Positions 9,171 to 61,509 of a DNA stretch of 64,000 nt are shown here, piece after piece (positions within the stretch are counted from its first letter, which is position 1; the number at the start of each line of letters is the position of its first letter). A program made the translations under genes and the position numbers. The notes beneath the pieces are model-generated. The model was not told where the DNA came from, ran no database searches, and was given only the letters and a program-made list of their open reading frames with translations. Location: IMG/VR virus record IMGVR_UViG_3300023174_000040, positions 62,001 to 126,000 of that record. One strand, given 5' to 3'.

Positions 9171-9326
9171 AATATATTCTGTGTTGTCATTTGTTTTTTT
9201 TTGAAAAAGTTTCTGGACTTTTTGTTTCTTTTGGGTACAGTTGACTGTTGCGACGATTGATCGTGTCAAGAGAGGTTAGAGTCTTATTGGGTTTCCCGCT
9301 GAAACGGAACCTTTTTAATCCTTTAA

Positions 9327-9345
9327 GTTTCTTTTTGGTACGGTT
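9327..9345 (+). promoter_or_regulatory. 19-nt conserved motif GTTTCYYTYYGGTACGGTW (candidate phage promoter)
   Basis: gtttctttttggtacggtt lies 66 nt upstream of ATG 9411; a degenerate copy is at 9224-9243. Confidence 0.65.
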
Positions 9346-9410
9346 GTTGGTCGTGCGACAGTCCTCATGTGAGGCTGGCACAAAGAATAGTTTTTAAAAG
9401 AGGTGTAATT

Positions 9411-9689
9411 ATGGCTCGTCCTAAGAAGTATGTTCGTGGTCGTCGTGCTGGTAAGAAGAGTGTTGATATGGAAACGTTCCTCACTACGGTTGCCAAGGTG
9501 GCTGCTGCTGGTGGTACGCAGTCGGAAGTTGCCGATAAACTCGGTCTGACCGCTGGTGCTGTCAGCCTGCGTTGCAAGGCTCTCCGTGATCGTGGTGTCA
9601 AGGTTCCGAAGTTCACCAAGGCTGGTACTGTCGGTCGCCGTATTGACGTTGCCGCCTGTAATGCTATTCTGGCCGCTGCGGCTGGTTGA
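9411..9689 (+). CDS. small basic helix-turn-helix DNA-binding protein
   Basis: GTQSEVADKLGLTAGAVSLRCKALR HTH pattern; aagagg RBS; paralog of 12547..12816. Confidence 0.75.
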   Translation: MARPKKYVRGRRAGKKSVDMETFLTTVAKVAAAGGTQSEVADKLGLTAGAVSLRCKALRDRGVKVPKFTKAGTVGRRIDVAACNAILAAAAG

Positions 9690-9696
9690 TCGTTAC

Positions 9697-9759
9697 AGCA
9701 GAGGTGGGGAGCCTGCAACAAGGTGGTTGTGGAACAGGTTCAATTCCTGTTATCTGCTT
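9697..9759 (+). ncRNA. compact tRNA-like element
   Basis: AGCAGA/TCTGCT closing stem, AACAGG-TTCAATT-CCTGTT T-arm and GCAAC/GTTGT hairpin; no canonical D-arm or anticodon loop. Confidence 0.35.
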
Positions 9760-9792
9760 AAGACCCGCCCTAAATTGATTAGGGCGGGTCTT
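9760..9792 (+). terminator. intrinsic terminator hairpin
   Basis: aagacccgccctaa / ttagggcgggtctt inverted repeat followed by atctttt. Confidence 0.7.
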
Positions 9793-9815
9793 ATCTTTTA
9801 ATAAATCGAGATTTT

Positions 9816-10265
9816 ATGCTTAGTGATAAAATAAAAGTATTTCAAAATTGTGCAGGAATTAATTTCGCAAAAGACGGGTATTTATCCCCGGCTCTTATCG
9901 CTGAATATACAGATTCTGAAATCAATGTATATTCAGCAGATTTTAATTCGCCTGATGATAAAGAAAAATTTGCCGACTTTATCAGATATCAGATAATTGA
10001 AAAACAACTTGTTGAGTATCTTTTTGTTGCTGAATCTTGGATGAGTCTTTATGAAAAAGATGGATCTTTTGTTAAAAAGATAGAAGCAATAACAATGACT
10101 CACTGCAGCAAGTTTCTTCCATATGAAACAGGCTATTATTCGGAAATAGAAAGATTTTCCGAAGATACTGCTATTCTTAAAGAATGGGTTGAATTTGGTA
10201 AAACATATGGTAGTGAAGGTAATTTTTCTAATTTATTTCTTAAATGTTCTCACGAATGGAATTGA
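9816..10265 (+). CDS. hypothetical protein
   Basis: 149-aa ORF co-oriented with its neighbours. Confidence 0.7.
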   Translation: MLSDKIKVFQNCAGINFAKDGYLSPALIAEYTDSEINVYSADFNSPDDKEKFADFIRYQIIEKQLVEYLFVAESWMSLYEKDGSFVKKIEAITMTHCSKFLPYETGYYSEIERFSEDTAILKEWVEFGKTYGSEGNFSNLFLKCSHEWN

Positions 10266-10282
10266 ATAATAAAGGAATCATA

Positions 10283-11368
10283 ATGTCTGTGATCGAATCT
10301 GCCAATCTGTATTATAAAGAAGGCGCCAGTGACAAAGTTTATCACGCTACCATTGAAGATATTAGCAATGGGTATGTTGTGAATTTTAGTTATGGACGTA
10401 GGGGAAGTGCCTTGAAAACAGGTAGTAAAACCCAAAGTCCAACTACTCTCGAAGATGCCAAGACTATTTTTAATAATCTTGTAAAAGAAAAAACGAGCAA
10501 GGGATATAGGTTTGTTGAAAATGCCAATCCCTCTGAAATTCCTGTTGTGAGTGATGATCTGCCTGATACTCCCAATGAGATACAGTGCGTTCTCTTAAAT
10601 CCAATTAGTCAAGATGAAGCTGAAAAGCTTATTAATGATGATAATTGGGCTCTCCAGCACAAACTTGATGGTGTCCGGTTTATGCTGGGCAAGGAAAAGG
10701 ATCAGTCTCCCCACGGAATTAATCGTAAAGGCAAAAGGATCAGCATTCCTACTGTGATTTGGAATGTTGTCACTAAGTTTGATGATAATTTCTTAGTTGA
10801 TGGTGAACTAATTGGTGAGACTTTGCACGTTTTTGACATTCTCGAATATCGTAGCGAATGTCTCAGGAAGAAAAGTTTGATTGAGAGGATGAAATATCTC
10901 AAGACTTTGTTTAAGTACATTGAATCTGAGAATATTATTCATACTCCTCTTTATCTTGAAAAGAAAGAAAAGCGTGAGGTTTATGACAGTTTGCTTAAAG
11001 AAAACAAAGAAGGAGTTGTCTTTAAGCATATTGATGCTCACTATAATATTGGTCGCCCTGCAAGTGGCGGAAACTATTTGAAGTACAAGTTCTATAGCAC
11101 TTGTAGTTGCGTGGTAACTGATATTAATAAAAAGCGTAGTGCCGCTATTGGTCTTTATAAGGGAAAGAAACTTGTGAAGGCTGGTAACGTAACCATTCCT
11201 GTTAATTTCGATGTGCCGAATGTGGGCGAAATCGTAGAGGTAAAATACCTCTACGCCAGAAAGCAATCTGGTTCTCTGTATCAACCTATTTATTTGGGTG
11301 TTAGGAATGACATCTCAAAAGAAGAGTGCCAGCAAACACAATTAAAGTTTAAAGCAGAAGAAGAATGA
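10283..11368 (+). CDS. lig: WGR-domain ATP-dependent DNA ligase
   Basis: N-terminal WGR-like SDKVY...FSYGRRG; adenylation motif QHKLDGVR, VDGE, FDIL, EGVVFK, LKYKF; OB fold with EVKYL and YLGVRND. Confidence 0.9.
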   Translation: MSVIESANLYYKEGASDKVYHATIEDISNGYVVNFSYGRRGSALKTGSKTQSPTTLEDAKTIFNNLVKEKTSKGYRFVENANPSEIPVVSDDLPDTPNEIQCVLLNPISQDEAEKLINDDNWALQHKLDGVRFMLGKEKDQSPHGINRKGKRISIPTVIWNVVTKFDDNFLVDGELIGETLHVFDILEYRSECLRKKSLIERMKYLKTLFKYIESENIIHTPLYLEKKEKREVYDSLLKENKEGVVFKHIDAHYNIGRPASGGNYLKYKFYSTCSCVVTDINKKRSAAIGLYKGKKLVKAGNVTIPVNFDVPNVGEIVEVKYLYARKQSGSLYQPIYLGVRNDISKEECQQTQLKFKAEEE

Positions 11369-11539
11369 TCAGTCTTTCTTTTTGAGGCTTTCATTCTCTA
11401 TCTGCAGTTTTCTGATTTGGCTTTCAAGTTCGTTGATTCCTCTTATGATTCGGAGAATTTGATCCCTTTTCTCTTCTTCATATGTGTTTGTTGCGATTCT
11501 TTTTAGTTCGCTCATATCCTGTGGCAAAATAGCTGGCAT
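11369..11539 (-). CDS. small hypothetical coiled-coil protein
   Basis: Likely coding part (MPAILPQ...) of ORF 11369..11689. Confidence 0.35.
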   Translation of the reverse strand: MPAILPQDMSELKRIATNTYEEEKRDQILRIIRGINELESQIRKLQIENESLKKKD

Positions 11540-11591
11540 ATAATTCCTTTTTGTTAAAAATCTTCCTAAAAATAAGATAGTAAAAACAAAA

Positions 11592-11610
11592 GTTTCTTTT
11601 TGGTACGTTG
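11592..11610 (+). promoter_or_regulatory. conserved 19-nt motif copy
   Basis: gtttctttttggtacgttg upstream of 11646. Confidence 0.6.
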
Positions 11611-11645
11611 AAGACTCGACCTCTCCACGGACGGAACTAATAATT

Positions 11646-12398
11646 GTGATATACAAAAACAAAAGCAAAGCAATCAAAGAAACTGGCATTAGTTACTTGG
11701 GCAGCGTCAATATGACTGCCAAGCATTCTAAGGCATTTAAATATAACGAACTTACATATTCTTTGTATTTATCTCCTGCAAACACATCTGGATTTGAAGT
11801 TTGTGCAGGAAGAACAAAAGAATGCACAATTGCTTGTTTGCACGAATCTGGACTTAATCGCATAGATCAGAAGCAGAATAATATCAATAAGTCTAGAATT
11901 GCAAAGACAAGGCTCTTTTTTCAAGAGCGTGATTATTTCATGAGTTGGATGATTGATGAAATTGAATCAACAAGAAGTAAGGCTAAGAAACTTGGATATA
12001 ATTTTAGTGTAAGATTAAATAACACAAGTGATTTATCTCCTGAAATCTTTACACTTGGAGATAAGAATATTCTCGAGATATTTGATGACTGCCAATTTTA
12101 TGAGTATAGCAAGATTTATCGAAGAATTGCCTTAACTAAGAAATATAAAAATTATGATCTAACTTTTTCATATAGTGGAAATAATATTGAAGAATGTCAA
12201 AAGGCAATCAATATCGATAATACTAGAGTGGCTGTGGTTTTTAAAGATAAGTTGCCTGAAAAGTTTATGGATCATGAGGTTATTAGTGGGGATGAATATG
12301 ATATGCGTTATCATGATCCAAAAAACGTAATAATTGGTTTGAAATTCAAAAAGGTTAGAAACGAAATCGATCTTAATAACAATTCTTTTGTTGTCTAA
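11646..12398 (+). CDS. Gp88-like phage protein
   Basis: EVCAGRTKECTIACL, VRLNNTSD, QFYEYSK, YDLTFSYS, VAVVF, GDEYDMR match the GP88 family pattern. Confidence 0.7.
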   Translation: MIYKNKSKAIKETGISYLGSVNMTAKHSKAFKYNELTYSLYLSPANTSGFEVCAGRTKECTIACLHESGLNRIDQKQNNINKSRIAKTRLFFQERDYFMSWMIDEIESTRSKAKKLGYNFSVRLNNTSDLSPEIFTLGDKNILEIFDDCQFYEYSKIYRRIALTKKYKNYDLTFSYSGNNIEECQKAINIDNTRVAVVFKDKLPEKFMDHEVISGDEYDMRYHDPKNVIIGLKFKKVRNEIDLNNNSFVV

Positions 12399-12546: not shown

Positions 12547-12816
12547 ATGGAGGATTTCACCATGTCCAAGAAAACAGCCGGCGATAAGAGAACATACGTC
12601 ACCATTGAGAATTTCCTCAGAGCGTATGAGAATCCTGCTTTTGGCTCTATTGGTGAAGTGGCAGACCATCTTGGCCTCAAGCCTAGTGCCGTGAGCCAAA
12701 GAGCTAGTAAGTTACGCCAGAAAGGTGTTGACCTTCGTAAGTTCAGTGGCAGTGGTCGCCCAAATGTTGTTGAAAAAGCAAACGAAATTCTGAAGCTGAT
12801 TCGCAGCAAGAAGTAA
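12547..12816 (+). CDS. small basic HTH DNA-binding protein
   Basis: SIGEVADHLGLKPSAVSQRASKLRQKGVDLRKF; paralog of 9411..9689. Confidence 0.75.
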   Translation: MEDFTMSKKTAGDKRTYVTIENFLRAYENPAFGSIGEVADHLGLKPSAVSQRASKLRQKGVDLRKFSGSGRPNVVEKANEILKLIRSKK

Positions 12817-12956: not shown

Positions 12957-12975
12957 GTTTCTTTTTGGTACGGTT
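12957..12975 (+). promoter_or_regulatory. conserved 19-nt motif copy
   Basis: gtttctttttggtacggtt upstream of ATG 13003. Confidence 0.65.
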
Positions 12976-13002
12976 GTCCCCTGTCCCGACAAAGAGGAAA
13001 AA

Positions 13003-13117: not shown

Positions 13118-14131
13118 ATGTATAATAATTCTTTGCATGTGAATCCTGGTATTAGAAATTTTTGGACTAATCTCAGGAAGAATGATTCTGAATTTCATGT
13201 ATTCAAGAAAAATAGGAATCTAGTATATTTCGGTCACGATCTCAGTAAGAGTAGTTACGAGTTTGTTCAAGATAGAATGAACAATCTTGGGATAAAGTTT
13301 GACCATAATAATTTGACGATGAGTTTCCTTAAAGCCCTTGAAGTTGAAAAGGGCAAAGAAGAAGTTCTTAGGGATCTTGCAATCAAGGCAGTTTGTGAAG
13401 CATTTGAAATTCCAGAAGATTTGCTTGATGCGAGTCTCAATGATGATGAAAATATTGAAGTAAATAATACCGAAGAAAACTTCCCTGAAAATGTAGATTA
13501 TGATTCTCTTGATCAAAATATCAAAGATCTGATCAATAAAAGGATCTTGATCAATTCAATTATCCAAGGTGCCAGCATTCATGCTTTTTATACAATGCAC
13601 CATCTTGTGAAAAATGAATTGGATGAAGTATCCCCTGAATTGATTAAATTGTATGATGAAATCAGTGTGGGTACAGTTTTTTCTTATTGGAAGATTGACT
13701 ATTCAGCTATAGTTGATAAGATGGATCCCTCCATGCTGGTTCAGGGTAGTTCTAAGGTGGAATACGAAGAAGATTCAGATGAACCTTCTGTTGTTGCGGC
13801 CGCTAGAACATTTGCAGTTCTTTGCCAAGAATTAGTGAAGGGTGCAATTGAATGTATTGCACTTCATGGCAGCAGAGATATTTCGGAAGAAGAACTCAAA
13901 ATTGTTTATAGTTTTGCTGATAAAAGAAGCGACGAACCAAGATATATCCAAATTGGTTCAGAAGTTTGGCGTAAAATTCTTTGCCTGATCAAGCAGTATA
14001 GAGAAAATGAAAAGATTTCTCTTCCTGAGTTCATCATGAAAATCTGTGTTCTTGAGCCAAATGATATTGAAAATTTCTTTGAGTTCTTTATGTCTGGTGA
14101 GAATGATAAAGCTATTGCCCTCCTAGATTGA
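13118..14131 (+). CDS. hypothetical phage protein
   Basis: 337-aa ORF starting right after the previous stop; no motif recognised. Confidence 0.8.
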   Translation: MYNNSLHVNPGIRNFWTNLRKNDSEFHVFKKNRNLVYFGHDLSKSSYEFVQDRMNNLGIKFDHNNLTMSFLKALEVEKGKEEVLRDLAIKAVCEAFEIPEDLLDASLNDDENIEVNNTEENFPENVDYDSLDQNIKDLINKRILINSIIQGASIHAFYTMHHLVKNELDEVSPELIKLYDEISVGTVFSYWKIDYSAIVDKMDPSMLVQGSSKVEYEEDSDEPSVVAAARTFAVLCQELVKGAIECIALHGSRDISEEELKIVYSFADKRSDEPRYIQIGSEVWRKILCLIKQYRENEKISLPEFIMKICVLEPNDIENFFEFFMSGENDKAIALLD

Positions 14132-14141
14132 TTTGAGGGAG

Positions 14142-14160
14142 GTTTCTTTTTGGTACGGTA
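14142..14160 (+). promoter_or_regulatory. conserved 19-nt motif copy
   Basis: gtttctttttggtacggta upstream of 14211. Confidence 0.65.
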
Positions 14161-14210
14161 GAGTGTTGTCAGCGACGGACAAATAAAATTTTTACAAGGA
14201 GATCCATAAT

Positions 14211-16408: not shown

Positions 16409-16750
16409 GTGATCAAAGAAATATGGACAATCATTTGTGGTGGAAGAAGCTTTGATAAGAACGATGAATTTTTTCAAACTAAACATACTTTTAGACTTGA
16501 AAAATATAAAGATAAAATCGAATGTGATATATTTAAGAACTACTACAAGGTCAAAGAAAATTTAATGTCCTTGATGAAGGAATTGAATGTCTTGGAGGAT
16601 AGGATCAACGACAAATATCCGCTGATGCTGTGTGCGGGCATAAGCCCGAAAGGTTCCTTCCGGTACGGTATGACACCAGAGCAGGTGGACGAGGAAAACG
16701 AAAAGATTCTGAAAGAATTGATCTTTTATATTAACTCTAAGAAATCATGA
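16409..16750 (+). CDS. hypothetical protein resembling the rIIA C-terminus
   Basis: LNVLEDRINDKYPLM...KELIFYINSK vs rIIA MNKLENEINSKYPLL...NDLVFYINNK. Confidence 0.65.
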   Translation: MIKEIWTIICGGRSFDKNDEFFQTKHTFRLEKYKDKIECDIFKNYYKVKENLMSLMKELNVLEDRINDKYPLMLCAGISPKGSFRYGMTPEQVDEENEKILKELIFYINSKKS

Positions 16751-20929: not shown

Positions 20930-20948
20930 CTTTCCCTCCGGTACGGTT
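20930..20948 (+). promoter_or_regulatory. conserved 19-nt motif copy
   Basis: ctttccctccggtacggtt upstream of 20968. Confidence 0.65.
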
Positions 20949-20967
20949 CCTGTTCAGGAGAGAAGCC

Positions 20968-21507
20968 GTGCAAATTCTAGAAAACTATAAATTCAAATCA
21001 AAGTCTAGCGAAGTCTTTGTTAAAGACTATTCATTTAATAAATTCGTGAAAGACTTCCCTGAATTCTCTGATTTACTACTCAGAATGAAAACTCATCTGA
21101 AAAATAATCATAAATATTATCTTGTGGATCTAATCATTAAAGACCACAAGAAAAATCAAAAGACTTGTGTCGATGTTCGCTATCATGTTGATGGTGAATA
21201 TGAAAGCAATAATCAATATTGTCTTTGGGTTAGTGGGCCAAATAGAACTTTGTTCCCTAAAGAACAATTTAATTTAGAGAGTTTTCCAAGTTCAAGAAAC
21301 GACCAGAATAATTTTTTGGAATTGTTCCTCAAAGATAAGGAATCTTTCGAAGTGCCAGAGGAAACTTTTGTTGTATACTCCAGCAAAGATCCCCATAAAG
21401 GTGTGGTTTGCGAAAAGGATGGCCGACGAATCTTTGTGCGTTTAATGGCAACAGATTACATAAAGCCAAAGAATTTCATCAAGAAGGGTTTCTCTCAGGT
21501 ACGGTAG
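20968..21507 (+). CDS. putative 2OG-Fe(II) oxygenase-fold protein
   Basis: HVDG (HxD), distal H in DPHKG, and RIFVR. Confidence 0.5.
   Translation: MQILENYKFKSKSSEVFVKDYSFNKFVKDFPEFSDLLLRMKTHLKNNHKYYLVDLIIKDHKKNQKTCVDVRYHVDGEYESNNQYCLWVSGPNRTLFPKEQFNLESFPSSRNDQNNFLELFLKDKESFEVPEETFVVYSSKDPHKGVVCEKDGRRIFVRLMATDYIKPKNFIKKGFSQVR
21488..21506 (+). promoter_or_regulatory. conserved 19-nt motif copy
   Basis: gtttctctcaggtacggta followed by a gtctct/agagac hairpin; upstream of 21547. Confidence 0.6.
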
Positions 21508-21546
21508 TCTCTTGTTAGAGAGACTCAAAAAACAATAGAGAGAAAC

Positions 21547-24162: not shown

Positions 24163-24210
24163 ATCCCCATTTTTTGTTGACTATTTTAGTATCCACAGTA
24201 TAATAATAGC

Positions 24211-26400: not shown

Positions 26401-26452
26401 GATACTTTATTTAGATATTTGAGTTTGTTTTTATTCTCTGTATAATAGGGGG

Positions 26453-26689: not shown

Positions 26690-26729
26690 CTAATTTTTTC
26701 CGGGAAATCGTAGACGACCGGCAAACTGC

Positions 26730-27213: not shown

Positions 27214-27603
27214 ATGATTAAGTTTCTTAGTTTTGTTTCTTGTTTAGTGGTTTGTGCTGGATCGTATGCCGGCCAGACCAGTATTGATAGCACCGATACA
27301 TCAGTTTCGGTTCTCAGGACCGATAGCATTGCCCCTGCTGCAACAACTGCCGCCCCAGTTGCTATCGCTAATTGCTGCAACACTTGCAATAGTTGTAATG
27401 ATGGTTGCATCAACAACTGTGATAGTTGCTGCAAGAAGCGTGAAAGGGCTTTCAGCCGCTCCCGCACTCATACTGAGAATGTAACCTGCCAGAACTGCCA
27501 GCAGGTTAAAGAGGAGACGGATACCGTTGAGACTAGTCGCAAGCGACTCAATGGTAGTGTAATCAAGAGAAGTCGTAGCCGTACTTCCGTTTCGGTACGG
27601 TAA
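27214..27603 (+). CDS. secreted Cys-rich, basic low-complexity protein
   Basis: aaggag RBS, signal peptide MIKFLSFVSCLVVCAGSYA, CCNTCNSC repeats, RSR-rich tail. Confidence 0.75.
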   Translation: MIKFLSFVSCLVVCAGSYAGQTSIDSTDTSVSVLRTDSIAPAATTAAPVAIANCCNTCNSCNDGCINNCDSCCKKRERAFSRSRTHTENVTCQNCQQVKEETDTVETSRKRLNGSVIKRSRSRTSVSVR

Positions 27604-27617
27604 CTGCTTGTCCCGCC

Positions 27618-44760: not shown

Positions 44761-45645
44761 GTGAAAATGACTAGTTACTCAGAAAAATATCACCAGTTCA
44801 TCTCAAACGTTACTTATGAGGATGTTGATTGTTTCATTAAAAATGGAACTATGATTAATGGGGAAAAGCCCAACAATATTCAAAAGATAGCTTTGTTTTC
44901 AATTATTAAGACAGAACCATATTATGCTTACTGCTATGCTAGGGATGTAATTAAAGACCGGTGGATTGAAGTTGAAGAAATCATAAAGAATAGCCGTCCA
45001 GAATATATCCATCATTATGCCAAAGATGTTATCAAGGGACGGTGGATTGAGTGCGAAGAGATTATCAAGAGTGATCCCCAGTATGCTTATCTTTATTCCA
45101 GAGATGTAATTAAAAATCGTTGGAATGAAGCAGAAGAGATTATTAAGACTGACCCATATTATGCCTATCTCTATGCTAGAGATATAATTAAAGATCGCTG
45201 GATTGAAGCAGAAAAAATTATTAAAACTAGTCCTGCATATGTTTACTATTACACCAAAGATGTCCTAAAAGATAGATGGATTGAAGCTGAGAGAGTTCTA
45301 ATCCACTATATGTATCTTTACGCCAAAGATATAATTAAAGGCAGATGGATCGAATCAGAAGGGATTATTAAAACTGATCCACGATATGCCTATTATTATG
45401 CTAGAGACGTAATCGAAGGTCGCTGGGTTGACGCAGAAGAAACCATAAAAACTAGTCCAGAGTATGCCTGTGGTTACGCTAAAGATGTAATTAAAGGAAG
45501 ATGGATTGAAGCAGAAGAAGTCATCAAGACTAGTCCAGAATTTCTTTATCAATATGCAGTCGAAGTAATCAAAGGAAGATTATCAGAAGAACTTGAAAGT
45601 GTTTTTGAAACACTCGAGTTTCCTTCCGGTACGGTTGGAGAGTAG
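44761..45645 (+). CDS. tandem-repeat (about 25-aa) helical solenoid protein
   Basis: About 9 copies of P.YAY.YARDVIKGRW.EAE.IIK. Confidence 0.85.
   Translation: MKMTSYSEKYHQFISNVTYEDVDCFIKNGTMINGEKPNNIQKIALFSIIKTEPYYAYCYARDVIKDRWIEVEEIIKNSRPEYIHHYAKDVIKGRWIECEEIIKSDPQYAYLYSRDVIKNRWNEAEEIIKTDPYYAYLYARDIIKDRWIEAEKIIKTSPAYVYYYTKDVLKDRWIEAERVLIHYMYLYAKDIIKGRWIESEGIIKTDPRYAYYYARDVIEGRWVDAEETIKTSPEYACGYAKDVIKGRWIEAEEVIKTSPEFLYQYAVEVIKGRLSEELESVFETLEFPSGTVGE
45618..45636 (+). promoter_or_regulatory. conserved 19-nt motif copy
   Basis: gtttccttccggtacggtt upstream of 45679. Confidence 0.65.
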
Positions 45646-45951: not shown

Positions 45952-45970
45952 GTTTCCTTCCGGTACGGTT
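45952..45970 (+). promoter_or_regulatory. conserved 19-nt motif copy upstream of the Tas-like operon
   Basis: gtttccttccggtacggtt upstream of ATG 46005. Confidence 0.65.
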
Positions 45971-46004
45971 GAGAGTAGTCTCCATAAAACAAAAGAAACA
46001 AAAC

Positions 46005-49779: not shown

Positions 49780-50184
49780 ATGAATATCGGAAAACTTATT
49801 AAAGAAAATCGCAAAAAATTAAATATGACCCAAAAAGAGTTGGCACAAACTCTTGGAATTAGTCATATCACAGTTTGCAGATGGGAAACTAATTTTATAG
49901 TTCCAACAAATTATAACTGGATAGTTCTACAAAATTTATTCGGACTACGAAAAGACAATTTAATAATGCCAACTAAAGGCTTTACACCAGTAAAAGTTAG
50001 AATTATTAAGCCTTTGAAAAAATTCAAGAAAATAAATAAAACCGCTGAAAGAAACAAACAAATTATCGAAAATTATAAAAAAGGAATACCAATAGACAAT
50101 TTAGCAAAATTCTACTCCATAAAGGAAAGTACAATAAAAAGTATTCTACTTAGTCAAAAAATAAAATTAAATGTAAGAGAATAA
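49780..50184 (+). CDS. XRE/Cro-family HTH transcriptional regulator
   Basis: IKENRKKLNMTQKELAQTLGISHITVCRWE; second HTH-like tail IDNLAKFYSIKESTI. Confidence 0.85.
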   Translation: MNIGKLIKENRKKLNMTQKELAQTLGISHITVCRWETNFIVPTNYNWIVLQNLFGLRKDNLIMPTKGFTPVKVRIIKPLKKFKKINKTAERNKQIIENYKKGIPIDNLAKFYSIKESTIKSILLSQKIKLNVRE

Positions 50185-50211
50185 GATTTTGATTCCCAGC
50201 CAGTGGCTGGG

Positions 50212-50840
50212 ATTTTAACAAGAGTCAAGAGTGAACCAGAAGCCCAGATTTTTTCATTTTGCCGGAGTGAACCAACCTGATTGATTTTAACAAGGACGAG
50301 AAGTGAACCATTATTAACGATTTTAACATGAACGTTGAGTGAGTCATCAGACTGGATTTTTACATACTGCCGGAGCGAACCAAGCCCGACGATTTTAACA
50401 AGGTGATCAAGTGAACCAGCGATGGTGATTTTTAACAAAAGAACCATCATTCGATATTTAACAAGGTAGTTGAGTGAACCAATGTGAGAGATTTTGCATG
50501 TATAGTGAGTGAACCTTCGACCCGGATTTTAACACTGATCAAGAGTGAACCTAGCCCTTCGATTTTAACAAGGTAGTTGAGTGAACCACAGTCGGGAATT
50601 TTAACAAATTTGGTGAGTGAACCATCATTCGATATTTTAACAAGGTAGTTGAGTGAACCACAGACCCGGATTTTAAACAGTGATCAACAGTGAACCAATT
50701 TGCTTGATTTTAACAAGGTGAAAGAGTGAACCTAGTGCCGGTATTTTAACAATGTGCGAGAGTGAACCAAATAAGAAGATTTTAACATGATGGTTTAGTG
50801 AACCTAGCTGTGCGATTTTAACAATGTGCGAGAGTGAACC
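50212..50840 (+). repeat. TIGR-like tandem interspaced guide RNA array (18 units, 36-nt period)
   Basis: Alternating ATTTTAACA and AGTGAACC blocks separated by variable 9-nt and 10-nt segments; one unit partly deleted. Confidence 0.88.
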
Positions 50841-50891
50841 AAAAAATTCTACTTGAAAAAAGTTTAAAAGTGTGTTAAAGTGAAAAACCAA

Positions 50892-50910
50892 GTTTCCCTC
50901 CGGTACGGTT
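50892..50910 (+). promoter_or_regulatory. conserved 19-nt motif copy
   Basis: gtttccctccggtacggtt just downstream of the array. Confidence 0.65.
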
Positions 50911-51024
50911 GGAGGGAACTTTGTGAGCGTGACTTGGGGCTGCCTCTCCTAAATCTATAGTCCGTAAAAAGTGTAAAAATAATCAGTGCAGAATAACCCA
51001 CAAACACTCAAAGGAGAAATTAAA

Positions 51025-51381: not shown

Positions 51382-51466
51382 GCTGAAGTGGCGAAACTGG
51401 CGAAACGCAGGGGACTTAAAATCCCCCACATTAGAAACACTGCGGGTTCGAATCCCGCCTTCAGCA
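51382..51466 (+). tRNA. tRNA-Leu(UAA)
   Basis: GCTGAAG/CTTCAGC acceptor, GGGGA-CTTAAAA-TCCCC anticodon arm, long variable arm, TTCGAAT loop. Confidence 0.95.
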
Positions 51467-51482
51467 CTGTAAATAAAAACAA

Positions 51483-51842
51483 GGGGGCGTAAAGGTATCG
51501 ACTGGATAAAAAGATTTATAACTGCATGTCGAGGTTAGTCGAACGGCCTCGTTAAAATTCGACTAAAGCCTTAACTGGCACTGTTAATTACGCAATGGCT
51601 GCCTGATAAAAAGGGCAACCACGAATCTAGGAAGCTAATGTTGGATGCGTCCTAAAATTCGTCGTCAAATCCAACTGGTTTTCTGGTGGTCAACTTACCT
51701 GAAAACGAGAAAATAGGTTGAGAGATTTTAAAGACTTTTGTTTATTGTAATCTTTAAAATCTATTTGAACAATAAACCAAACATGTGAAGAAGTTATATT
51801 TTGATTTATTTCAGGACAGGAGTTCGACTCTCCTCGCCTCCA
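51483..51842 (+). ncRNA. ssrA: tmRNA; tag (A)GTVNYAMAA*
   Basis: 5' GGGGGCG pairs with 3' CGCCTCC-A, G-U at position 3, T-arm caggag-ttcgact-ctcct; tag ORF ggc act gtt aat tac gca atg gct gcc tga. Confidence 0.92.
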
Positions 51843-51867
51843 TTTATAATTTCAACTAAAGGAAAAC

Positions 51868-56778: not shown

Positions 56779-57042
56779 CCGAAGGTAGCAAAACGGTTAA
56801 TGCAACAAACTCATGAATTTTCGTGCCATACGATTGGAAACTTCGTATGGGATGTCGTCAAATTCGGTGAAACCTAAATGCGTGAGCATATGGCAATGCC
56901 GAGCGAAGCCCGTAAGGGAACGTGTAGAGACTTAACGGCGACCACCTAAATCGTAAGATATGGTGAAGACAAAGTCCAAGGAGTGGTGAAAATCACACAA
57001 ACTTGAATTTGTAGACTGTGGGTTCGAATCCCACCCTTCGGA
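56779..57042 (+). tRNA. tRNA(CAU), probably Ile2, interrupted by a group I intron
   Basis: Exons 56779-56814 and 57006-57042 give CCGAAGG/CCTTCGG-A and ACAAA-CTCATAA-TTTGT; lies 16 nt after tilS. Confidence 0.88.
56815..57005 (+). ncRNA. group I self-splicing intron (191 nt, no ORF)
   Basis: aaattcggtgaa, caatgccgagc, gtagagact, aaagtcc; terminal G; P1 CATGAA/TTCGTG with a U-G wobble at the 5' splice site. Confidence 0.9.
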
Positions 57043-57046
57043 CGTA

Positions 57047-57682: not shown

Positions 57683-57950
57683 ATCAGTCTTAATCTTATC
57701 TTCTTCTTTGGTTCTTGGCATCCTTTTTGTTTTCTTTTTGGAAACTAGGATATCTAGATCCACTATAGAAGAAAAACAAGCACTTTATCAAAGTGGTTTA
57801 AAAGAGGGCAAACTAGCCTTCTCTGCGAAAGAAAACATGTTTCCAATTGATGATAATATGGTTTATACCAATTGCACAACCTTCTTAAAATCAAAAGAAG
57901 AAGTTGAAGGATTTATAGAGGGATATACTTCTTTTTCAAAATCTAATTAA
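57657..57950 (+). CDS. membrane-anchored hypothetical protein
   Basis: N-terminal hydrophobic helix. Confidence 0.6.
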   Translation: MEYTMLPNKSVLILSSSLVLGILFVFFLETRISRSTIEEKQALYQSGLKEGKLAFSAKENMFPIDDNMVYTNCTTFLKSKEEVEGFIEGYTSFSKSN

Positions 57951-58744
57951 TTTTTTATTATATCTTTGACTTCTATCTTTCCAAAGTAGGTATTGGGATC
58001 AGAGGCGTAATTGTTGGCCAAGTGATATGAATAGCACAATTCGCTTATTTGATTGTTTTCTATTCTAATCATGGGAGTTTTACCTAATCCCCACATAGGA
58101 TAAGAAGCAGCATTTTCTCTTGATGTATCTAGCTTAGTAAAATTTGGAGTTATGCTTTCTTTTAGTTGTTTCTTCGGCATAATCCAAAAAGCATGATATG
58201 GTTGTGATAAAGTCATGAAAGATTTACCATTAACTGATGTTGTATTGATTGATTGTTGACTGGTAATGTCAGTTACGAATTTCTTTCCATTGTGATGTTC
58301 AACTCTAATAAAAGATGGAACACGTCCCAATTTCCATAATTCATCAAAATTTGATATGTATTCATTGAATGCATCGTAGGTCACCAACATATCATCTTCA
58401 ACATACATGAAATAATCATAATTATCAATATTATCTATAAAGTGTTTTCTGTGCACCCATGTTAAATGATAAGGATGCTCTAAATTATGCACACATACTT
58501 TAGCGTTTAAATTTACATGTTTATTAGAATCTACAATAATATCAACATCTGCTTTGTAGGTAGCGTAATTATTCAATAATTGTTTTACGTAATCTATCCT
58601 TTTTTCAACATAGTGAAATGCAATGCAAACTAATATTTTAGATTTTACTTCCATGTGTTTATGTATTATTTTATAAAATTTTTTAAAAACCATCAAACTT
58701 GCACCTAAAGTTTCTTTTTGGTACGGTCTGGTCGCAGCCTCCAA
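57947..58744 (-). CDS. glycosyltransferase-like hypothetical protein
   Basis: YDYFMYVEDD DxD-like motif; real start probably downstream of the ORF-track start. Confidence 0.55.
   Translation of the reverse strand: MEAATRPYQKETLGASLMVFKKFYKIIHKHMEVKSKILVCIAFHYVEKRIDYVKQLLNNYATYKADVDIIVDSNKHVNLNAKVCVHNLEHPYHLTWVHRKHFIDNIDNYDYFMYVEDDMLVTYDAFNEYISNFDELWKLGRVPSFIRVEHHNGKKFVTDITSQQSINTTSVNGKSFMTLSQPYHAFWIMPKKQLKESITPNFTKLDTSRENAASYPMWGLGKTPMIRIENNQISELCYSYHLANNYASDPNTYFGKIEVKDIIKN
58710..58728 (+). promoter_or_regulatory. conserved 19-nt motif copy
   Basis: gtttctttttggtacggtc upstream of ATG 58768. Confidence 0.65.
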
Positions 58745-58767
58745 CCAAAAATCAAAGGACTACAGAT

Positions 58768-59040: not shown

Positions 59041-59082
59041 AGTTGGCATAATTAACTTTCTACAAAATTAGCCCGCAAGATC

Positions 59083-59120
59083 CGCTAGGCCCATAGAGAA
59101 ATTTATGGGCCTAGCGTTTG
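59083..59120 (+). terminator. terminator hairpin
   Basis: cgctaggcccata / tatgggcctagcg followed by ttt. Confidence 0.65.
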
Positions 59121-59136
59121 GGCATTTATACCTATC

Positions 59137-59640
59137 ATGAAAATTGAAAAAGATTGGATTACAAAGGCTGGTCTTAGAGCCATTGTAATATTTAACCAAA
59201 ATGGACAATATCGCTGTGGTTATGTGGGTGTAGAAAAAGATAGCGGCTACTATGGGGTGGAAAACACTGATATTGATGAATACTTAACTGTTCATGGTGG
59301 TGTTACATTTTCTAGCCATTTAAACGGCCTGCCGGAAAATATTTGGTGGATCGGTTATGATTGTGCCCACAGCGGCGATCTTGTTAAATGGACAGATTCT
59401 TGGTCAAAGGGAGTAGAACGCTCCTTGAAATACTGTGTAAAAGAATGTGAAAGCCTTGCACTTCAGCTTTCCTATATTCCAATGAAAAATTATTTTTATG
59501 CCATTAATATTTCAAAAGGCAAACTTCCAGAAGATATGCACAAACAAATGCTTCTTCTTTCATTGGAAGCTCCCAATGGTTGCTTTTTAAAAGATTACTT
59601 TGTAAAATCTTACTTTCAATTTATTGGAGAAAAAGTTTGA
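59137..59640 (+). CDS. conserved hypothetical phage protein
   Basis: RCGYVGV...VHGGVTF...WIGYDCAH. Confidence 0.8.
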   Translation: MKIEKDWITKAGLRAIVIFNQNGQYRCGYVGVEKDSGYYGVENTDIDEYLTVHGGVTFSSHLNGLPENIWWIGYDCAHSGDLVKWTDSWSKGVERSLKYCVKECESLALQLSYIPMKNYFYAINISKGKLPEDMHKQMLLLSLEAPNGCFLKDYFVKSYFQFIGEKV

Positions 59641-60143
59641 ACAAGAGAGTTGCTAAAACTTTTCATCAACTGATGAAAAATGGCTGGTCTCCAGTAAGTT
59701 ACAAACATCATCCTGAGCATATCAAGAAAGCAATAAGTCTTGCTCACTTTCGGCCTGCTGCCAAACAGTGCTTTGCAAATAGTCAAAAACTATTAACCGA
59801 CCAGAATATAATTGAACTATTGTATGCGGAAGGTATTGTGGTTGGATTAAGTGGTATTTTTATTGAGCATGCTTGGGTAATAGATTCAAATGGTATCAAT
59901 CATGATATTACTTTGGACCCTGCTCCTAAAATAATTTGCAATCAAATTTTTTCTACCAAAGAGATTTACGCAAATATGGTGAAAACTGGTTGTTATACAC
60001 CATTGGATCAAAATTGGCTTGATATTATGAAGACCGCATGTTATTTTGGTGTTCCTACAAATCTTCCTCTAGGGGAAGTAGAAGAAAAAGTTAAAAATCA
60101 ATTTCAATTTCTCAAAGATATGAACCAAGAAATAGTGAAGTAA
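59637..60143 (+). CDS. hypothetical protein
   Basis: CFANS...YAEG...IEHAW. Confidence 0.7.
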   Translation: MNKRVAKTFHQLMKNGWSPVSYKHHPEHIKKAISLAHFRPAAKQCFANSQKLLTDQNIIELLYAEGIVVGLSGIFIEHAWVIDSNGINHDITLDPAPKIICNQIFSTKEIYANMVKTGCYTPLDQNWLDIMKTACYFGVPTNLPLGEVEEKVKNQFQFLKDMNQEIVK

Positions 60144-60144
60144 A

Positions 60145-60240
60145 ATGGAACACCTAAAAGACTTAAAGATTCTTCCTACCGATTATTTTGAGTATGGAGG
60201 ACAAATTGAACGATGGAAAGGTGAACTACCCACCCCCTAA
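60145..60240 (+). pseudogene. short ORF apparently truncated by the TnpB element
   Basis: MEHLKDLKILPTDYFEYGGQIERWK runs into the element end at 60221 and stops within it. Confidence 0.45.
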
Positions 60241-61430
60241 AGGGAGTGGGCTTCAAGTTTCATAGCCTTGTCTAACGACAACGACTCCACTTGTTTTTGT
60301 TTATTGAGCGACTTGGTTCCCAAACCACTCATATTCAAACCTTGTTTTAGTATGTTGAGACTGGCGTTGTGGTCTCGGTCAATGTTCTTCCCACAAACGC
60401 ACTTCCATTCACGATCTTTCAGCGATAATTCTTGATTGATGTATCCACAATCAAAGCAAGTTTTACTGCTTGGGAAAAATCGGTCTATCTTAATCAGTGT
60501 TCGTCCATACCATTCTGCTTTGTAGGATAGTTGACGAACGAATTCTCCCCAACCGCAATTCATCACCGATTTTGCCAACTTATGATTACTCATCATGCCC
60601 TTTACATTAAGGTCTTCTACGCATATGATTTGGTTTTCGTCAATCAACTTTCTGGAAAGTTTATGCAAGAAGTCCGTTCTATTGTTGGTGATTTTTTCAT
60701 ATATCTTGGCTACTTTAAGTCTTTGTTTTCCTCTGGTGGTTCCTCCTTTTGTCTTTTTGCTCAATTGTCTTTGGTTGTATTTTAACTTTTTCTCTAACTT
60801 GTGGTAGTGTTTAGGGTTGTCAAAAACTTCGGCGTTGGAGCAAACAGCAAAGCTTTTGATGCCCAAATCAACACCTATTTTGTTTTTGTTTTTCTTGAGT
60901 TTATTTTGCTCAACTTCACAAGTAAGTGAAACAAAATACTTGTTTGTTGAAGTCTTGGATATGGTGATGAACCTTATCTCACCAAATTCACGATGGATGT
61001 TTAGTCTGATTCCTTCCTTGAATTTGGGAAAATATATTCTGTCATTCTTGACAGAGATGTGTTGTGGAACTCTGAAACTTTGCTTTTTGTGTTTTGACTT
61101 GAAGATTGGAAACTTGGTTTCTTTCCTGAAAAACTTGTTGTATGCTGTGTCCAAGTCACGCAATGTGTGTTGCAATGTTTGGCTGTTGACTTCCCTAAGC
61201 CAGTTGTATTCGGTCTTCTTTTTAACCTTGGTCAGTTCGTTGGCACAATCGTAGTAGTTCAATGTCTTCTTGTTGTCTAAATACTCTTCTTTTCGTCTGT
61301 TCAAGAAATAATTCCACACGAACCTTCTGCAACCAAAGTGTTGACTCAGTTTTTCTTTTTGGTCTTTTGTGGGTAGTAGTTGAAACTTAAACGATTTGAG
61401 CATACAATGGTATGTATGCAGGTCAGTCCA
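60221..61430 (-). mobile_element. TnpB-only IS200/IS605-family (IS1341-like) element
   Basis: Right end reads ...gaagcccactccctttagggggtgggtagttcac on the minus strand; left boundary is approximate; no tnpA. Confidence 0.75.
60237..61403 (-). CDS. tnpB: RNA-guided endonuclease TnpB
   Basis: N-terminal HTH_OrfB-like region, RuvC IGVDLG / VEDL / DRDHNA, zinc finger CFDCG...CVCG. Confidence 0.95.
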   Translation of the reverse strand: MLKSFKFQLLPTKDQKEKLSQHFGCRRFVWNYFLNRRKEEYLDNKKTLNYYDCANELTKVKKKTEYNWLREVNSQTLQHTLRDLDTAYNKFFRKETKFPIFKSKHKKQSFRVPQHISVKNDRIYFPKFKEGIRLNIHREFGEIRFITISKTSTNKYFVSLTCEVEQNKLKKNKNKIGVDLGIKSFAVCSNAEVFDNPKHYHKLEKKLKYNQRQLSKKTKGGTTRGKQRLKVAKIYEKITNNRTDFLHKLSRKLIDENQIICVEDLNVKGMMSNHKLAKSVMNCGWGEFVRQLSYKAEWYGRTLIKIDRFFPSSKTCFDCGYINQELSLKDREWKCVCGKNIDRDHNASLNILKQGLNMSGLGTKSLNKQKQVESLSLDKAMKLEAHSL

Positions 61431-61490
61431 AATTTATACGGGAATTATGGTTTTTGTAGATTTTACTGGGTACGGTTGTTTTGAGAAGTA

Positions 61491-61509
61491 GTTTCCCTCC
61501 GGTACGGTT
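61491..61509 (+). promoter_or_regulatory. conserved 19-nt motif copy
   Basis: gtttccctccggtacggtt upstream of 61531; a degenerate copy is at about 61460-61477. Confidence 0.65.

What the first reader, a model, noticed from the sequence alone, without database searches (positions are those of the whole stretch)
9224..61509. About 15 copies of a 19-nt strand-specific motif, GTTTCYYTYYGGTACGGTW
Seen: copies start at 9224 (degenerate), 9327, 11592, 12957, 14142, 16652, 20930, 21488, 27584 (degenerate), 45618, 45952, 50892, 58710, 61460 (degenerate) and 61491. All are on the + strand, and most end 20-120 nt before a start codon or structured RNA. Several are followed by a short hairpin, and several overlap the 3' end of the upstream CDS. 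The motif does not resemble a sigma70 -35/-10 pair. Inference: it is a promoter for a phage-encoded RNA polymerase or sigma factor, or an activator site defining an early regulon that includes rIIA and the Tas-like gene.
Basis: partly seen in the sequence, partly recalled or inferred. Interest (0 to 1): 0.75.

Follow-up and report, generated by a model that had tools for sequence, protein, structure and literature searches.

The report
Phage-specific promoter motif of a jumbo phage
The repeated 19-letter motif is almost certainly the promoter of the early/middle genes of an uncultivated freshwater jumbo phage, probably read by a phage-encoded sigma factor that close relatives carry but this genome record lacks.

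Summary
All 15 copies are in the window, on the + strand; chance expects 0.13. The window is part of a 323-kb freshwater phage record. That record holds 61 exact GGTACGGT cores on the + strand and 1 on the - strand, all between 33 and 217 kb, mostly intergenic and each co-oriented with the gene downstream.

Six copies have an SD-less ATG exactly 16 nt after the first core G, each opening a 71-170 aa ORF (P = 3e-7). That position is a purine in 57 of 61 copies. I infer a transcription start there, which puts the core at -16..-9 and GTTTC at -26..-22, with no -35 element.

Relatives keep the architecture. One lineage has GGTACGCT in all 38 copies, and another has GGTACGNT. The motif is at chance level in 596 Gb of cellular genomes.

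All three motif-bearing lineages encode one family of sigma-70 proteins. In the GGTACGGT lineage the sigma gene sits directly behind its own motif copy. This record, and the main strain in its source sample, lack that gene.

No phage RNA polymerase was found. Motif copies also sit at the junctions of swapped gene cassettes, as in T4-type PeSLs. Verdict: a new member of a known kind, a phage sigma regulon. No RNA data were available.

The parts
9224..9250 (+). Degenerate promoter copy (core GGTACAGT at 9234-9241). The inferred +1 is G at 9250. It stands in tandem with the next copy.
9327..9353 (+). Promoter copy (core 9337-9344), inferred +1 G at 9353. A 58-nt hairpin-containing leader runs to the ATG at 9411, the start of a 92-aa HTH paralog.
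11592..11618 (+). Promoter copy with core GGTACGTT, inferred +1 G at 11618. It lies 28 nt before the GTG at 11646, the start of a 250-aa ORF whose relatives' orthologue carries PF17338 (GP88).
12957..12983 (+). Promoter copy, inferred +1 G at 12983. It lies 20 nt before the ATG at 13003 (37 aa), which is followed by the 337-aa ORF at 13118.
14142..14168 (+). Promoter copy directly after a terminator-like hairpin, inferred +1 G at 14168. It lies 43 nt before the rIIA-like gene (14211-16397).
16652..16678 (+). Promoter copy inside the 3' end of ORF 16409-16750, inferred +1 A at 16678. It lies 69 nt before the ATG at 16747, the start of a 441-aa PcfJ-like ORF.
20930..20956 (+). Promoter copy, inferred +1 A at 20956. 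It lies 12 nt before the GTG at 20968 (179 aa).
21488..21514 (+). Promoter copy overlapping the last codons of ORF 20968-21507, inferred +1 G at 21514. A hairpin begins at the end of the core.
27584..27610 (+). Degenerate-upstream copy with an exact core. It is the first promoter after the - strand gene block 23422-27467, with inferred +1 G at 27610, 84 nt before the ATG at 27694.
45618..45644 (+). Promoter copy in the 3' end of ORF 44761-45645, inferred +1 A at 45644. It lies 35 nt before the ATG at 45679.
45952..45978 (+). Promoter copy, inferred +1 G at 45978. It lies about 27 nt before the ATG at 46005.
50892..50918 (+). Promoter copy just after a 36-nt tandem array, inferred +1 A at 50918. 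It heads the ORF at 51025, tRNA-Leu at 51382 and tmRNA at 51483.
58710..58736 (+). Promoter copy at the switch from - strand ORF 57947-58744 to + strand genes, inferred +1 A at 58736. It lies 32 nt before the ATG at 58768.
61459..61485 (+). Copy with an exact core (61469-61476) and a degenerate upstream half. It lies after the - strand TnpB gene, in tandem with the next copy.
61491..61517 (+). Promoter copy, inferred +1 G at 61517. It lies 14 nt before the ATG at 61531 (146 aa).

Best explanation
The motif is a phage-specific promoter. The invariant part is T-Y-Y-GGTACG-N-T, where N is G in this lineage. It occupies about -19 to -9 relative to a start site that lies 9 nt after the core. A lineage- and class-specific pyrimidine-rich extension runs to -26: GTTTCYYTYY in the dispersed 'class A' copies, and GAT(T/A)GATTTT in the dense 'class B' copies at 168-184 kb. 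There is no -35 element.

About 70 copies drive the + strand genes between 33 and 184 kb of the phage genome. These include rIIA, ligases, NAD salvage genes, tRNAs, tmRNA and many small ORFs. A different promoter-like class, TATATA followed 3-7 nt later by a leaderless ATG, precedes about 40 ORFs on both strands, among them most large structural genes.

The most likely reader is host core RNA polymerase carrying a phage-encoded sigma-70-family factor. This factor has regions 1.2/2 and 4 but no region 3, and is about 275 aa long. The architecture is a single conserved element with a start 6-9 bp downstream, as known for phiEco32 gp36 and T4 gp55.

In the sister lineage the sigma operon follows a canonical TTGACT-N17-TATAAT promoter. 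In this lineage the sigma gene sits behind its own motif copy. Together these suggest a cascade (host sigma, then phage sigma, then the motif regulon) with positive feedback.

Shown: the positions, orientation, conservation and co-occurrence. The motif copies additionally serve as junctions at which promoter-ORF cassettes are swapped between strains.
For: Distribution: there are 14 hits against 0.13 expected in the window. Genome-wide there are 61 cores on + and 1 on -, confined to 33-217 kb. 44 of 61 lie in the 12.6% of sequence that is intergenic. The only - strand copy is a full motif 61 nt upstream of a - strand ORF and is conserved in relatives.

Start site: a purine lies 16 nt after the first core G in 57/61 copies here, 35/38 in G005 and 22/23 in G010, and in 15/15 window copies. 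Six copies have an ATG exactly there, without an SD, opening ORFs of 71-170 aa. The background rate is 0.0043, giving a binomial P of 2.7e-7. No other offset between 6 and 29 has more than 2, and SD-led starts begin at offset 27 or later. The same is seen once each in G005 and G010. Leaderless starts behind a TATATA box are common in this genome.

Specificity: the core is invariant in G001 (51:1) and G002 (21:2) while the flanks drift. G005 has 38 GGTACGCT and 0 GGTACGGT. G010 has GGTACGNT at 25:1. The 19-mer gave only 41 single hits in 596 Gb of cellular genomes. I estimate about 69 by chance from pattern degeneracy and database size; no tool computed this.

Sigma: the family passes TIGR02937 in all three lineages, at 58, 44 and 46 bits against a cut-off of 42.9. 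Contigs whose sigma is 48-100% identical to that of G005 all carry GGTACGCT copies. In the GGTACGGT lineage five contigs show the order csrA, motif, sigma, GMP reductase. More distant sigmas, at 30-40% identity, have no such motif. A canonical sigma-70 promoter precedes the clade-I sigma operon. The known analogue is described in PMC8948821.
Against: No RNA data exist for this phage, and no RNA run was listed. The start site is therefore inferred.

The record holding the window has no sigma-70-family gene in 323 kb. At the syntenic spot it carries 211 unrelated bp. Contigs of the source sample and two others show the sigma-less form as dominant. A third strain has another unrelated insert there.

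The sigma has a region 4, yet the promoters show no -35 element. No sigma residue could be tied to the G/C difference at -10, and G010 tolerates any base there.

Two tRNA genes in G000 begin at or inside a core copy, which does not fit a start 9 nt downstream for those two copies.

Co-occurrence of sigma and motif among related phages is expected for any shared gene.
Confidence: 0.6

Rival explanations
1. Host primary sigma reads the core as an extended -10 promoter: YGG-TACGGT resembles TGn-TAnnnT. It would do so alone or helped by a phage activator or appropriator that binds the pyrimidine-rich half, in the manner of T4 MotA/AsiA. One of the multi-copy small HTH proteins could be that activator.
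For: TACGGT fits TAnnnT, and T or C followed by GG precedes it. Canonical sigma-70 promoters exist in these phages. The record lacks a phage sigma. A family of at least 7 small HTH proteins is encoded directly behind motif copies.
Against: The three 'n' positions are invariant (CGG) in about 130 copies across three genomes and switch to CGC as a block in another lineage. A primary sigma would not impose this. The spacer to the inferred start is a rigid 8 nt. The spacer behind the TATATA boxes of the same genome is 3-7 nt. There is no -35, and no enrichment in cellular genomes. The HTH hits are generic, all below cut-off.
Confidence: 0.17
2. The motif is the promoter of an unrecognised phage RNA polymerase, single-subunit or of a novel type, encoded in the unsampled part of the genome or among proteins without any family match.
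For: An 18-nt contiguous, highly conserved, strand-specific element with lineage-specific single-base differences is typical of T7-family promoters. The record is incomplete: it is 64% complete by CheckV, and a relative's end does not join the other end. A 225-kb contig extends about 140 kb past the left end but could not be read. Several ORFs of 600-1100 aa have no family hits.
Against: PF00940 and PF00562 gave no hit in G000, and PF00940 none in G001, G002 or G005, though the PF00940 search had no positive control. No DFDGD-type catalytic motif occurs in any frame of G000. The 30 largest ORFs are structural, RCC1-like, helicase, terminase or portal proteins. Positions -8..-3 are not conserved, unlike in T7-type promoters. 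Loci found by the motif in metagenomes that are related to G000 all map inside the known 323 kb.
Confidence: 0.1
3. The motif is primarily a DNA-level site for recombination, nicking or packaging polarity and is not a promoter. Its position near gene starts would be a by-product of cassette insertion.
For: Boundaries of homology blocks between G000 and G001 or G002 fall within 40 nt of a core in 16/34 and 16/40 cases, against 17% expected, and many are within 10 nt. The left junction of the sigma cassette lies 5 nt before GTTTC. tRNA genes are fused to cores.
Against: The fixed-offset leaderless ATGs and the +1 purine are not explained. A copy stands at each switch from - strand to + strand genes in the window. 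The single - strand copy follows its gene's orientation. Class A copies in conserved regions are not at breakpoints. T4-type PeSLs show that promoters can double as recombination sites (PMC2839356, PMC4122927).
Confidence: 0.04
4. The motif acts in RNA, as a processing site, a terminator tail or a leader element, and is transcribed from elsewhere.
For: The pyrimidine tract sometimes follows a GC-rich hairpin like a terminator tail, for example at window 14100-14151. The YYG-GTA-CGG sequence could form a 3-bp hairpin.
Against: Only a minority of copies have an upstream hairpin. The possible stem is 3 bp. Leaderless ATGs 8 nt after the core leave the motif outside the mRNA. The distance to start codons is otherwise variable, at 12-161 nt.
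Confidence: 0.03

Closest known systems
phiEco32 gp36-dependent middle/late promoters (phage sigma, single element tAATGTAtA; PMC8948821)
   Same: Both have one highly conserved element and no -35. The start lies a few bp downstream: 6-8 bp in phiEco32, with an 8-nt spacer here. The sigma is phage-encoded and works with host core enzyme. Early genes, including those upstream of the sigma, are read by host sigma-70.
   Different: The consensus is unrelated. The sigma here keeps a region 4, whereas gp36 lacks one. The element extends to -26. There are about 70 copies against 6. Nothing here has been tested biochemically.
T4 late promoters (TATAAATA, gp55) and SPO1 gp28 / gp33-34 sigma cascades (from my own knowledge)
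   Same: Both involve phage sigma-family proteins that redirect host core RNAP to phage-specific elements defining a temporal class. T4 late promoters are an 8-bp element near -10 with no -35.
   Different: The core here is GC-containing and sits 2-3 bp further upstream. No gp55, gp33 or clamp dependence is known or tested. The TATATA class in this genome is closer to T4 late promoters than the motif is.
PeSL promoter / stem-loop cassettes of T4-type phages (PMC2839356, PMC4122927)
   Same: Conserved promoter motifs flank small ORFs in hyperplastic regions. They coincide with insertion, deletion and replacement junctions between close strains, and terminator-like hairpins often lie just upstream.
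   Different: PeSL promoters are host sigma-70 early promoters, whereas these are not sigma-70-like. The stem-loop is present in only part of the copies here.
T7-family single-subunit RNAP promoters
   Same: Both are long, contiguous, strand-specific elements with lineage-specific single-base changes, and initiation is on a purine.
   Different: No such polymerase gene was found. Conservation stops at -9 rather than running through +1.

Membership tests
Promoter of a phage-encoded sigma-70-family factor (single-element type) | Copies lie upstream of and co-oriented with genes, and are enriched in non-coding DNA. | tested here: met
   61 cores on + and 1 on -, and the - strand copy precedes a - strand ORF. 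44 of 61 lie in the 12.6% of sequence that is intergenic.
Promoter of a phage-encoded sigma-70-family factor (single-element type) | Transcription starts at a fixed short distance downstream. | tested here: inconclusive
   The evidence is indirect only: a purine at core+16 in 57/61 copies, and six leaderless ATGs at that exact offset (P = 2.7e-7). No RNA run was listed.
Promoter of a phage-encoded sigma-70-family factor (single-element type) | A cognate sigma gene is present in the same genome. | tested here: not met
   None was found in the 323-kb record, and 211 bp replace the cassette. The feature is met in close strains and sister lineages. The record is incomplete.
Promoter of a phage-encoded sigma-70-family factor (single-element type) | Sigma-dependent, sequence-specific initiation in vitro or in vivo. 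| not testable with these tools
   This needs recombinant sigma plus core RNAP on wild-type and mutant templates.
Housekeeping sigma-70 promoter (-35 / -10) | A conserved -35 hexamer lies 17 +/- 1 bp upstream of a -10 hexamer. | tested here: not met
   There is no conservation upstream of -26 in any class.
Housekeeping sigma-70 promoter (-35 / -10) | The -10 hexamer follows TAnnnT with free inner positions, and the start lies about 7 nt downstream. | tested here: not met
   TACGGT fits the outline, but its inner CGG is invariant, and the start is inferred 9 nt downstream.
T7-like single-subunit RNAP promoter | A single-subunit RNAP gene (PF00940) is present. | tested here: not met
   There was no hit in G000, G001, G002 or G005. 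The control set had no positive, so sensitivity is unverified.
T7-like single-subunit RNAP promoter | Conservation is continuous through the start site, about -17 to +6. | tested here: not met
   Positions -8..-3 are unconserved.
Multisubunit phage RNAP promoters (phiKZ / AR9 type) | Beta/beta'-like genes with a DFDGD-type catalytic motif are present. | tested here: not met
   PF00562 gave no hit, and no D[FY]DGD-type motif occurs in any frame of ORFs of at least 250 aa.
Sigma-54 (-24 / -12) promoter | GG and GC doublets lie exactly 10 bp apart (TGGCACG-N4-TTGCW). | tested here: not met
   YGGTACG resembles the -24 box, but the next conserved TTG(T) lies 8 nt away, not 4, and coincides with the inferred start.
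N4 virion-RNAP hairpin promoter | A 5-7 bp stem with a 3-nt loop lies in the promoter. | tested here: not met
   Only a 3-bp stem is possible (CCG-GTA-CGG), and it is lost in the TT variants.
PeSL-type mobile promoter cassettes | Motif copies sit at indel or replacement junctions between close strains. | tested here: met
   16/34 and 16/40 block boundaries lie within 40 nt of a core, against 17% expected. The sigma cassette junction fits too.
PeSL-type mobile promoter cassettes | The promoter is a host sigma-70 early promoter joined to a stem-loop. | tested here: not met
   The motif is not sigma-70-like. Upstream hairpins are only modestly enriched.

The most novel reading that the evidence does not exclude
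The sigma is not the reader of the motif. The dominant, sigma-less strain expresses some 70 motif promoters through a so far unrecognised specificity factor, for instance the multi-copy small HTH family or a polymerase of a new type in the unsampled part of the genome. Alternatively, sigma-less genomes are cheaters that spread only by co-infection with sigma-carrying kin.
Probability: 0.2. Interest if true: 0.7.

Novelty: new member of a known kind. Interest (0 to 1): 0.5.

Why it matters
Transcription programmes of uncultivated jumbo phages are almost unknown. This case yields, from sequence alone:
- a full promoter model with its core, extension and inferred start;
- a regulon of about 70 units;
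- a second, leaderless TATATA promoter class;
- a candidate sigma family spread over many large freshwater phage contigs.

The natural G / C / N variation at one promoter position across three lineages, each with its own sigma, offers a ready-made specificity-swap experiment. The sigma cassette is present in some near-identical strains and absent in others. This raises a testable question about dependence between co-circulating phage variants. The motif also allows early/middle gene units to be annotated in related metagenomic contigs.

Tried and rejected
- **RNA evidence.** No RNA run was listed for the window. The only runs holding it are DNA metagenomes from lakes, so no transcription starts could be mapped.
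- **Published phage genomes.** Megablast of 8 kb of the window against 50,697 phage records found nothing.
- **Literature.** A search for the core string returned only primers.
- **Polymerase and sigma searches in the record.** PF00940, PF00562, PF04542, TIGR02937 and phrog_3282 gave no full hit. A regex for beta' and T7 catalytic motifs found only one HDS tripeptide, in a 621-aa ORF. A weak Rpb1_5 hit in the same ORF (E = 0.17) is treated as chance. The protein atlas search gave no lead for that ORF.
- **Syntenic position of the clade-I sigma.** In G000 that position holds a T4-type RNA ligase, not a sigma.
- **Bacteroidota-type promoter idea (TAnnTTTG).** This box is not enriched in intergenic DNA, and canonical TTGACT-N17-TATAAT promoters exist. 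I rejected it.
- **Canonical sigma-70 sites.** They are not enriched genome-wide, about 330 against about 335 in shuffles.
- **Hairpin after the motif as a defining feature.** Not supported statistically.
- **Tying sigma region 2.4 residues to the G/C difference.** No consistent residue was found.
- **Reaching the missing part of the genome.** The 225-kb JGI contig is not held, and its genes are not in the viral collection.
- **Host inference.** GMP reductase homologues are all unnamed metagenomic proteins.
- **G013.** Its apparent 11:1 strand bias equals its control count and its contexts are unconserved, so I did not count it.

Full report
**1. The observation**

The pattern GTTTCYYTYYGGTACGGTW, searched with up to 3 mismatches, occurs 14 times in the window. 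Dinucleotide shuffles expect 0.13, with a maximum of 2. The fifteenth copy, near 61460, has an exact core GGTACGGT at 61469 but a degenerate upstream half.

The window is bases 62001-126000 of a 323,267-bp IMG/VR virus record, here called G000. The record is about 35% GC, is classed as linear, and is 64% complete by CheckV. DNA runs that hold it are freshwater and lake metagenomes, and no RNA run was listed.

**2. Genome-wide picture**

The 8-mer GGTACGGT occurs 61 times on the + strand and once on the - strand. All + copies lie between 33.6 and 184.2 kb. None lies in 1-33 kb or in 185-323 kb, where structural genes are found: terminase, portal, tape-measure-like and baseplate-like proteins. 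A position-weight scan adds about 10 one-mismatch copies on the + strand in the same region, for example AGTACGGT four times.

Two classes share the core:
- **Class A.** These 30 copies are dispersed before 160 kb. They read GTTTCYYTYY-GGTACGGT-TG.
- **Class B.** These 31 copies are packed into 168-184 kb, among small ORFs and tRNAs. They read roughly GAT(T/A)GATTTT-GGTACGGT.

By a crude ORF map, 44 of 61 copies fall in the 12.6% of the genome that is intergenic. In the window, a copy stands at every switch from - strand to + strand genes, at 27584, 58710 and 61459/61491. The one - strand copy, at G000 217102, is a full class A motif. It lies 61 nt upstream of a - strand 177-aa ORF and is conserved in relatives. 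Orientation therefore follows the gene and not a genome-wide polarity.

**3. Where transcription probably starts**

The position 16 nt after the first core G is a purine in 57 of 61 copies and is usually preceded by T. It is a purine in all 15 window copies.

Six copies have an ATG exactly at that position, without a Shine-Dalgarno sequence, each opening an ORF of 71-170 aa. They are at G000 45298, 134652, 168340, 168658, 175413 and 178498. No other offset from 6 to 29 has more than two ATGs, and SD-led starts begin at offset 27 or later. The background rate of such ATGs is 0.0043 per position, which gives a binomial P of 2.7e-7.

Leaderless starts are plausible in this system. About 40 ORFs, including many large structural genes on both strands, start 3-7 nt after a TATATA box.

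I therefore place +1 at core+16. This puts the core at -16..-9 and GTTTC at -26..-22. Positions -8..-3 are unconserved, and nothing is conserved upstream of -26, so there is no -35 element. This start site is an inference; no transcript data exist.

Two tRNA genes contradict it for their own copies. tRNA-Ser begins at 172326, at the end of a core. tRNA-Glu begins at 174364, inside a one-mismatch core. In G001 the corresponding promoter is followed by a tRNA at a compatible distance. These two copies therefore look like recombination products.

**4. Relatives**

- **G001** (251 kb, 92-98% identical) has 51 copies on one strand and 1 on the other.
- **G002** (65 kb, about 78% identical) has 21 and 2. 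The core is invariant while the class B upstream half has drifted to GATAGTCTCT.
- **G005** (187.6 kb, portal 72% identical) is a more distant phage. It has no GGTACGGT at all but 38 copies of aGTTTCCTCCC-GGTACGCT, all on one strand, with a purine at core+16 in 35 of 38 and one leaderless ATG there.
- **G010** (181 kb) represents a third lineage. It has GGTACGNT at 25 forward to 1 reverse (control 4:5), with upstream CCTTTTYGG, G at core+16 and again one leaderless ATG.

The invariant part is thus T-YY-GGTACG-N-T, and the N is lineage-specific: G, C or any base.

In 596 Gb of bacterial and archaeal genomes the 19-mer gave 41 single hits. I estimate about 69 by chance from pattern degeneracy and database size; no tool computed this. 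The motif is therefore not a cellular promoter consensus.

**5. Who reads it**

No polymerase was found:
- PF00940 and PF00562 gave no hit. The PF00940 search had no positive control.
- No DFDGD-type motif occurs in six frames.
- The 30 largest ORFs are structural or otherwise assigned.

G000 also has no sigma-70 region 2 and no TIGR02937 match. It has only region-4-like helix-turn-helix hits in a family of at least 7 small paralogs. Each is about 85 aa and lies just behind a motif copy. Their family matches are generic and below cut-off.

G005, however, encodes a sigma-70-family protein. Its family comprises 82 members at E < 1e-40, many on contigs of 100-470 kb. Members have regions 1.2/2 and 4 but no region 3, and three representatives pass the TIGR02937 cut-off.

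Contigs whose sigma is 48-100% identical to that of G005 all carry GGTACGCT copies.

A metagenome scan with the class A motif recovered L235. Its flanks are 99% identical to G000's left end. Between a csrA-like gene and the GMP reductase gene it carries an 886-bp cassette made of aGTTTCTTTTC-GGTACGGT plus a 274-aa sigma. This sigma is 47% identical to G005's.

Four more contigs of the GGTACGGT lineage show the same order, with a motif copy directly upstream of sigma. These are L261, L262, L285 (from the same sample as G002) and L286. G010 carries a sigma 43% identical to that of L235. Phages with more distant sigmas, at 30-40% identity, show no such motif.

In clade I the sigma operon follows a perfect TTGACT-N17-TATAAT promoter. 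In G000 a sigma-70-like site precedes csrA. This supports a cascade of host sigma, then phage sigma, then the motif regulon, with positive feedback in this lineage.

**6. The caveat**

G000 itself lacks the cassette. At positions 2924-3134 it has 211 unrelated bp. Logan contigs of the source sample and of two other lakes show this sigma-less joint as the main form, at depth about 37. Only traces of the sigma's first 300 nt appear, at depth about 3. A third set of strains (L282-L284, from contigs of 145 and 225 kb) has yet another insert there, with an unrelated 211-aa ORF. A profile of the sigma family finds nothing in G000, G001 or G002.

The record is incomplete, since G001's extra 3.2 kb does not join G000's other end. 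The 225-kb contig that runs about 140 kb past the left end could not be read. Loci related to G000 that the motif scan recovered from metagenomes all map inside the known 323 kb.

The sigma is therefore the best candidate, but the link is circumstantial. No residue in region 2.4 tracks the G/C difference. The sigma has a region 4 with no visible -35 target.

**7. Second role: cassette junctions**

In the 166-186 kb region, boundaries of homology blocks between G000 and G001, and between G000 and G002, lie within 40 nt of a core in 16 of 34 and 16 of 40 cases. The expectation is 17%, and many boundaries are within 10 nt. The left junction of the sigma cassette lies 5 nt before GTTTC. This matches the PeSL promoter/stem-loop cassettes of T4-type phages (PMC2839356, PMC4122927), except that those are host sigma-70 promoters. 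Upstream terminator-like hairpins are modestly enriched (p = 0.006). Hairpins downstream of the inferred start are not enriched.

**8. Comparison with known systems and verdict**

The closest described architecture is that of phiEco32 gp36 promoters. These have one conserved element, tAATGTAtA, no -35, and a start 6-8 bp downstream, and they are read by a phage sigma with host core enzyme (PMC8948821). From my own knowledge, T4 gp55 late promoters and the SPO1 sigma cascade are of the same kind.

Other known promoter types each fail a tested defining feature; these are set out in the membership table:
- the housekeeping -35/-10 promoter;
- the sigma-54 -24/-12 promoter;
- T7-type promoters;
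- phiKZ/AR9-type promoters;
- N4 hairpin promoters.

I file the finding as a new member of a known kind: the promoter regulon of a phage sigma factor. My confidence is about 0.9 that it is a promoter and about 0.6 for the full statement including the sigma. It is a solid and useful annotation result with one real puzzle, the sigma-less dominant strain, rather than a new mechanism.

Noticed in passing
G000 genome-wide, e.g. G000:C1 6445, 21287, 23180, 145368, 252707 (+) and 236651, 231779, 215374 (-). In the window, e.g. 53989 (G000 115989).: There is a second promoter-like class: a TATATA box followed 3-7 nt later by an ATG with no Shine-Dalgarno. It opens about 40 ORFs of at least 60 aa on both strands, including many large structural genes. 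It looks like a leaderless late (or host-type) promoter class.
   Followed up: partly
G000:C1:2924-3134 (outside the window); L235:65-950; L261:2370-3256; L285:8830-9716; L282:11082-11734: The locus between csrA and the GMP reductase gene is hypervariable. It holds a promoter-plus-sigma cassette in some strains, 211 bp with a 44-codon ORF in this record, and an unrelated 211-aa ORF in others.
   Followed up: yes
window 9411-9689 and 12547-12816; G000 146.6, 169.4, 171.8, 174.0 and 178.8 kb: A family of at least 7 paralogous HTH proteins of about 85 aa (MGRQVGQKGV..GGSV.DVA..LGI..GSVSVRLSQLRKKHG) is present, each just behind a motif copy. Three of them have a conserved, structured 5' leader (GTTCC/GTTGC ... 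GGAAC/GCAAC).
   Followed up: partly
window 50210-50843: A degenerate tandem array of about 17 units of 36 nt, with conserved GATTTTAACAA and GAGTGAACCA blocks, lies directly upstream of the promoter at 50892 and next to an XRE-type HTH gene (49780-50184). The relative G005 has 44 or more units. It could be an iteron or a protein-binding array.
   Followed up: partly
window 28567-28760 and 56805-56998; tRNA hits at 28877-29016, 44394-44492 and 56976-57043: Two group I introns (Rfam RF00028, 60 and 59 bits) lie next to unusually long or odd tRNA hits. These may be intron-containing tRNA genes.
   Followed up: no
window 51382-51467 and 51483-51845: The phage encodes tRNA-Leu(taa) and a full tmRNA with tag GTVNYAMAA, both downstream of the promoter at 50892.
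   Followed up: no
window 60237-61403 (-): A TnpB / IS605 OrfB-type gene (HTH_OrfB_IS605, OrfB_IS605 and Cas12f1-like TNB domains) lies on the - strand, just before the tandem promoter copies at 61459/61491. Relatives carry TnpB genes next to their sigma operon (L133, L134).
   Followed up: no
G000:C1:172319-172414 and 174359-174438: tRNA-Ser (anticodon act) begins at the last base of a core copy, and tRNA-Glu begins inside a one-mismatch core (GGTAC|GGC...). These appear to be promoter-tRNA fusions made by recombination at the motif.
   Followed up: partly
L263 (JGI contig Ga0620605_0003099), genes at 6939-7196, 10001-10849 and 11067-11957: A more distant phage contig (50% GC) encodes two adjacent sigma-70-family genes and an 85-aa protein matching the RNA polymerase alpha C-terminal domain.
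   Followed up: no
window 706-8389: Two very large ORFs are present. One is 1009 aa with an FGE-sulfatase-like domain. The other is 1561 aa with a subtilase S8 domain and carbohydrate-binding modules. No motif copy lies upstream of either within the window.
   Followed up: no
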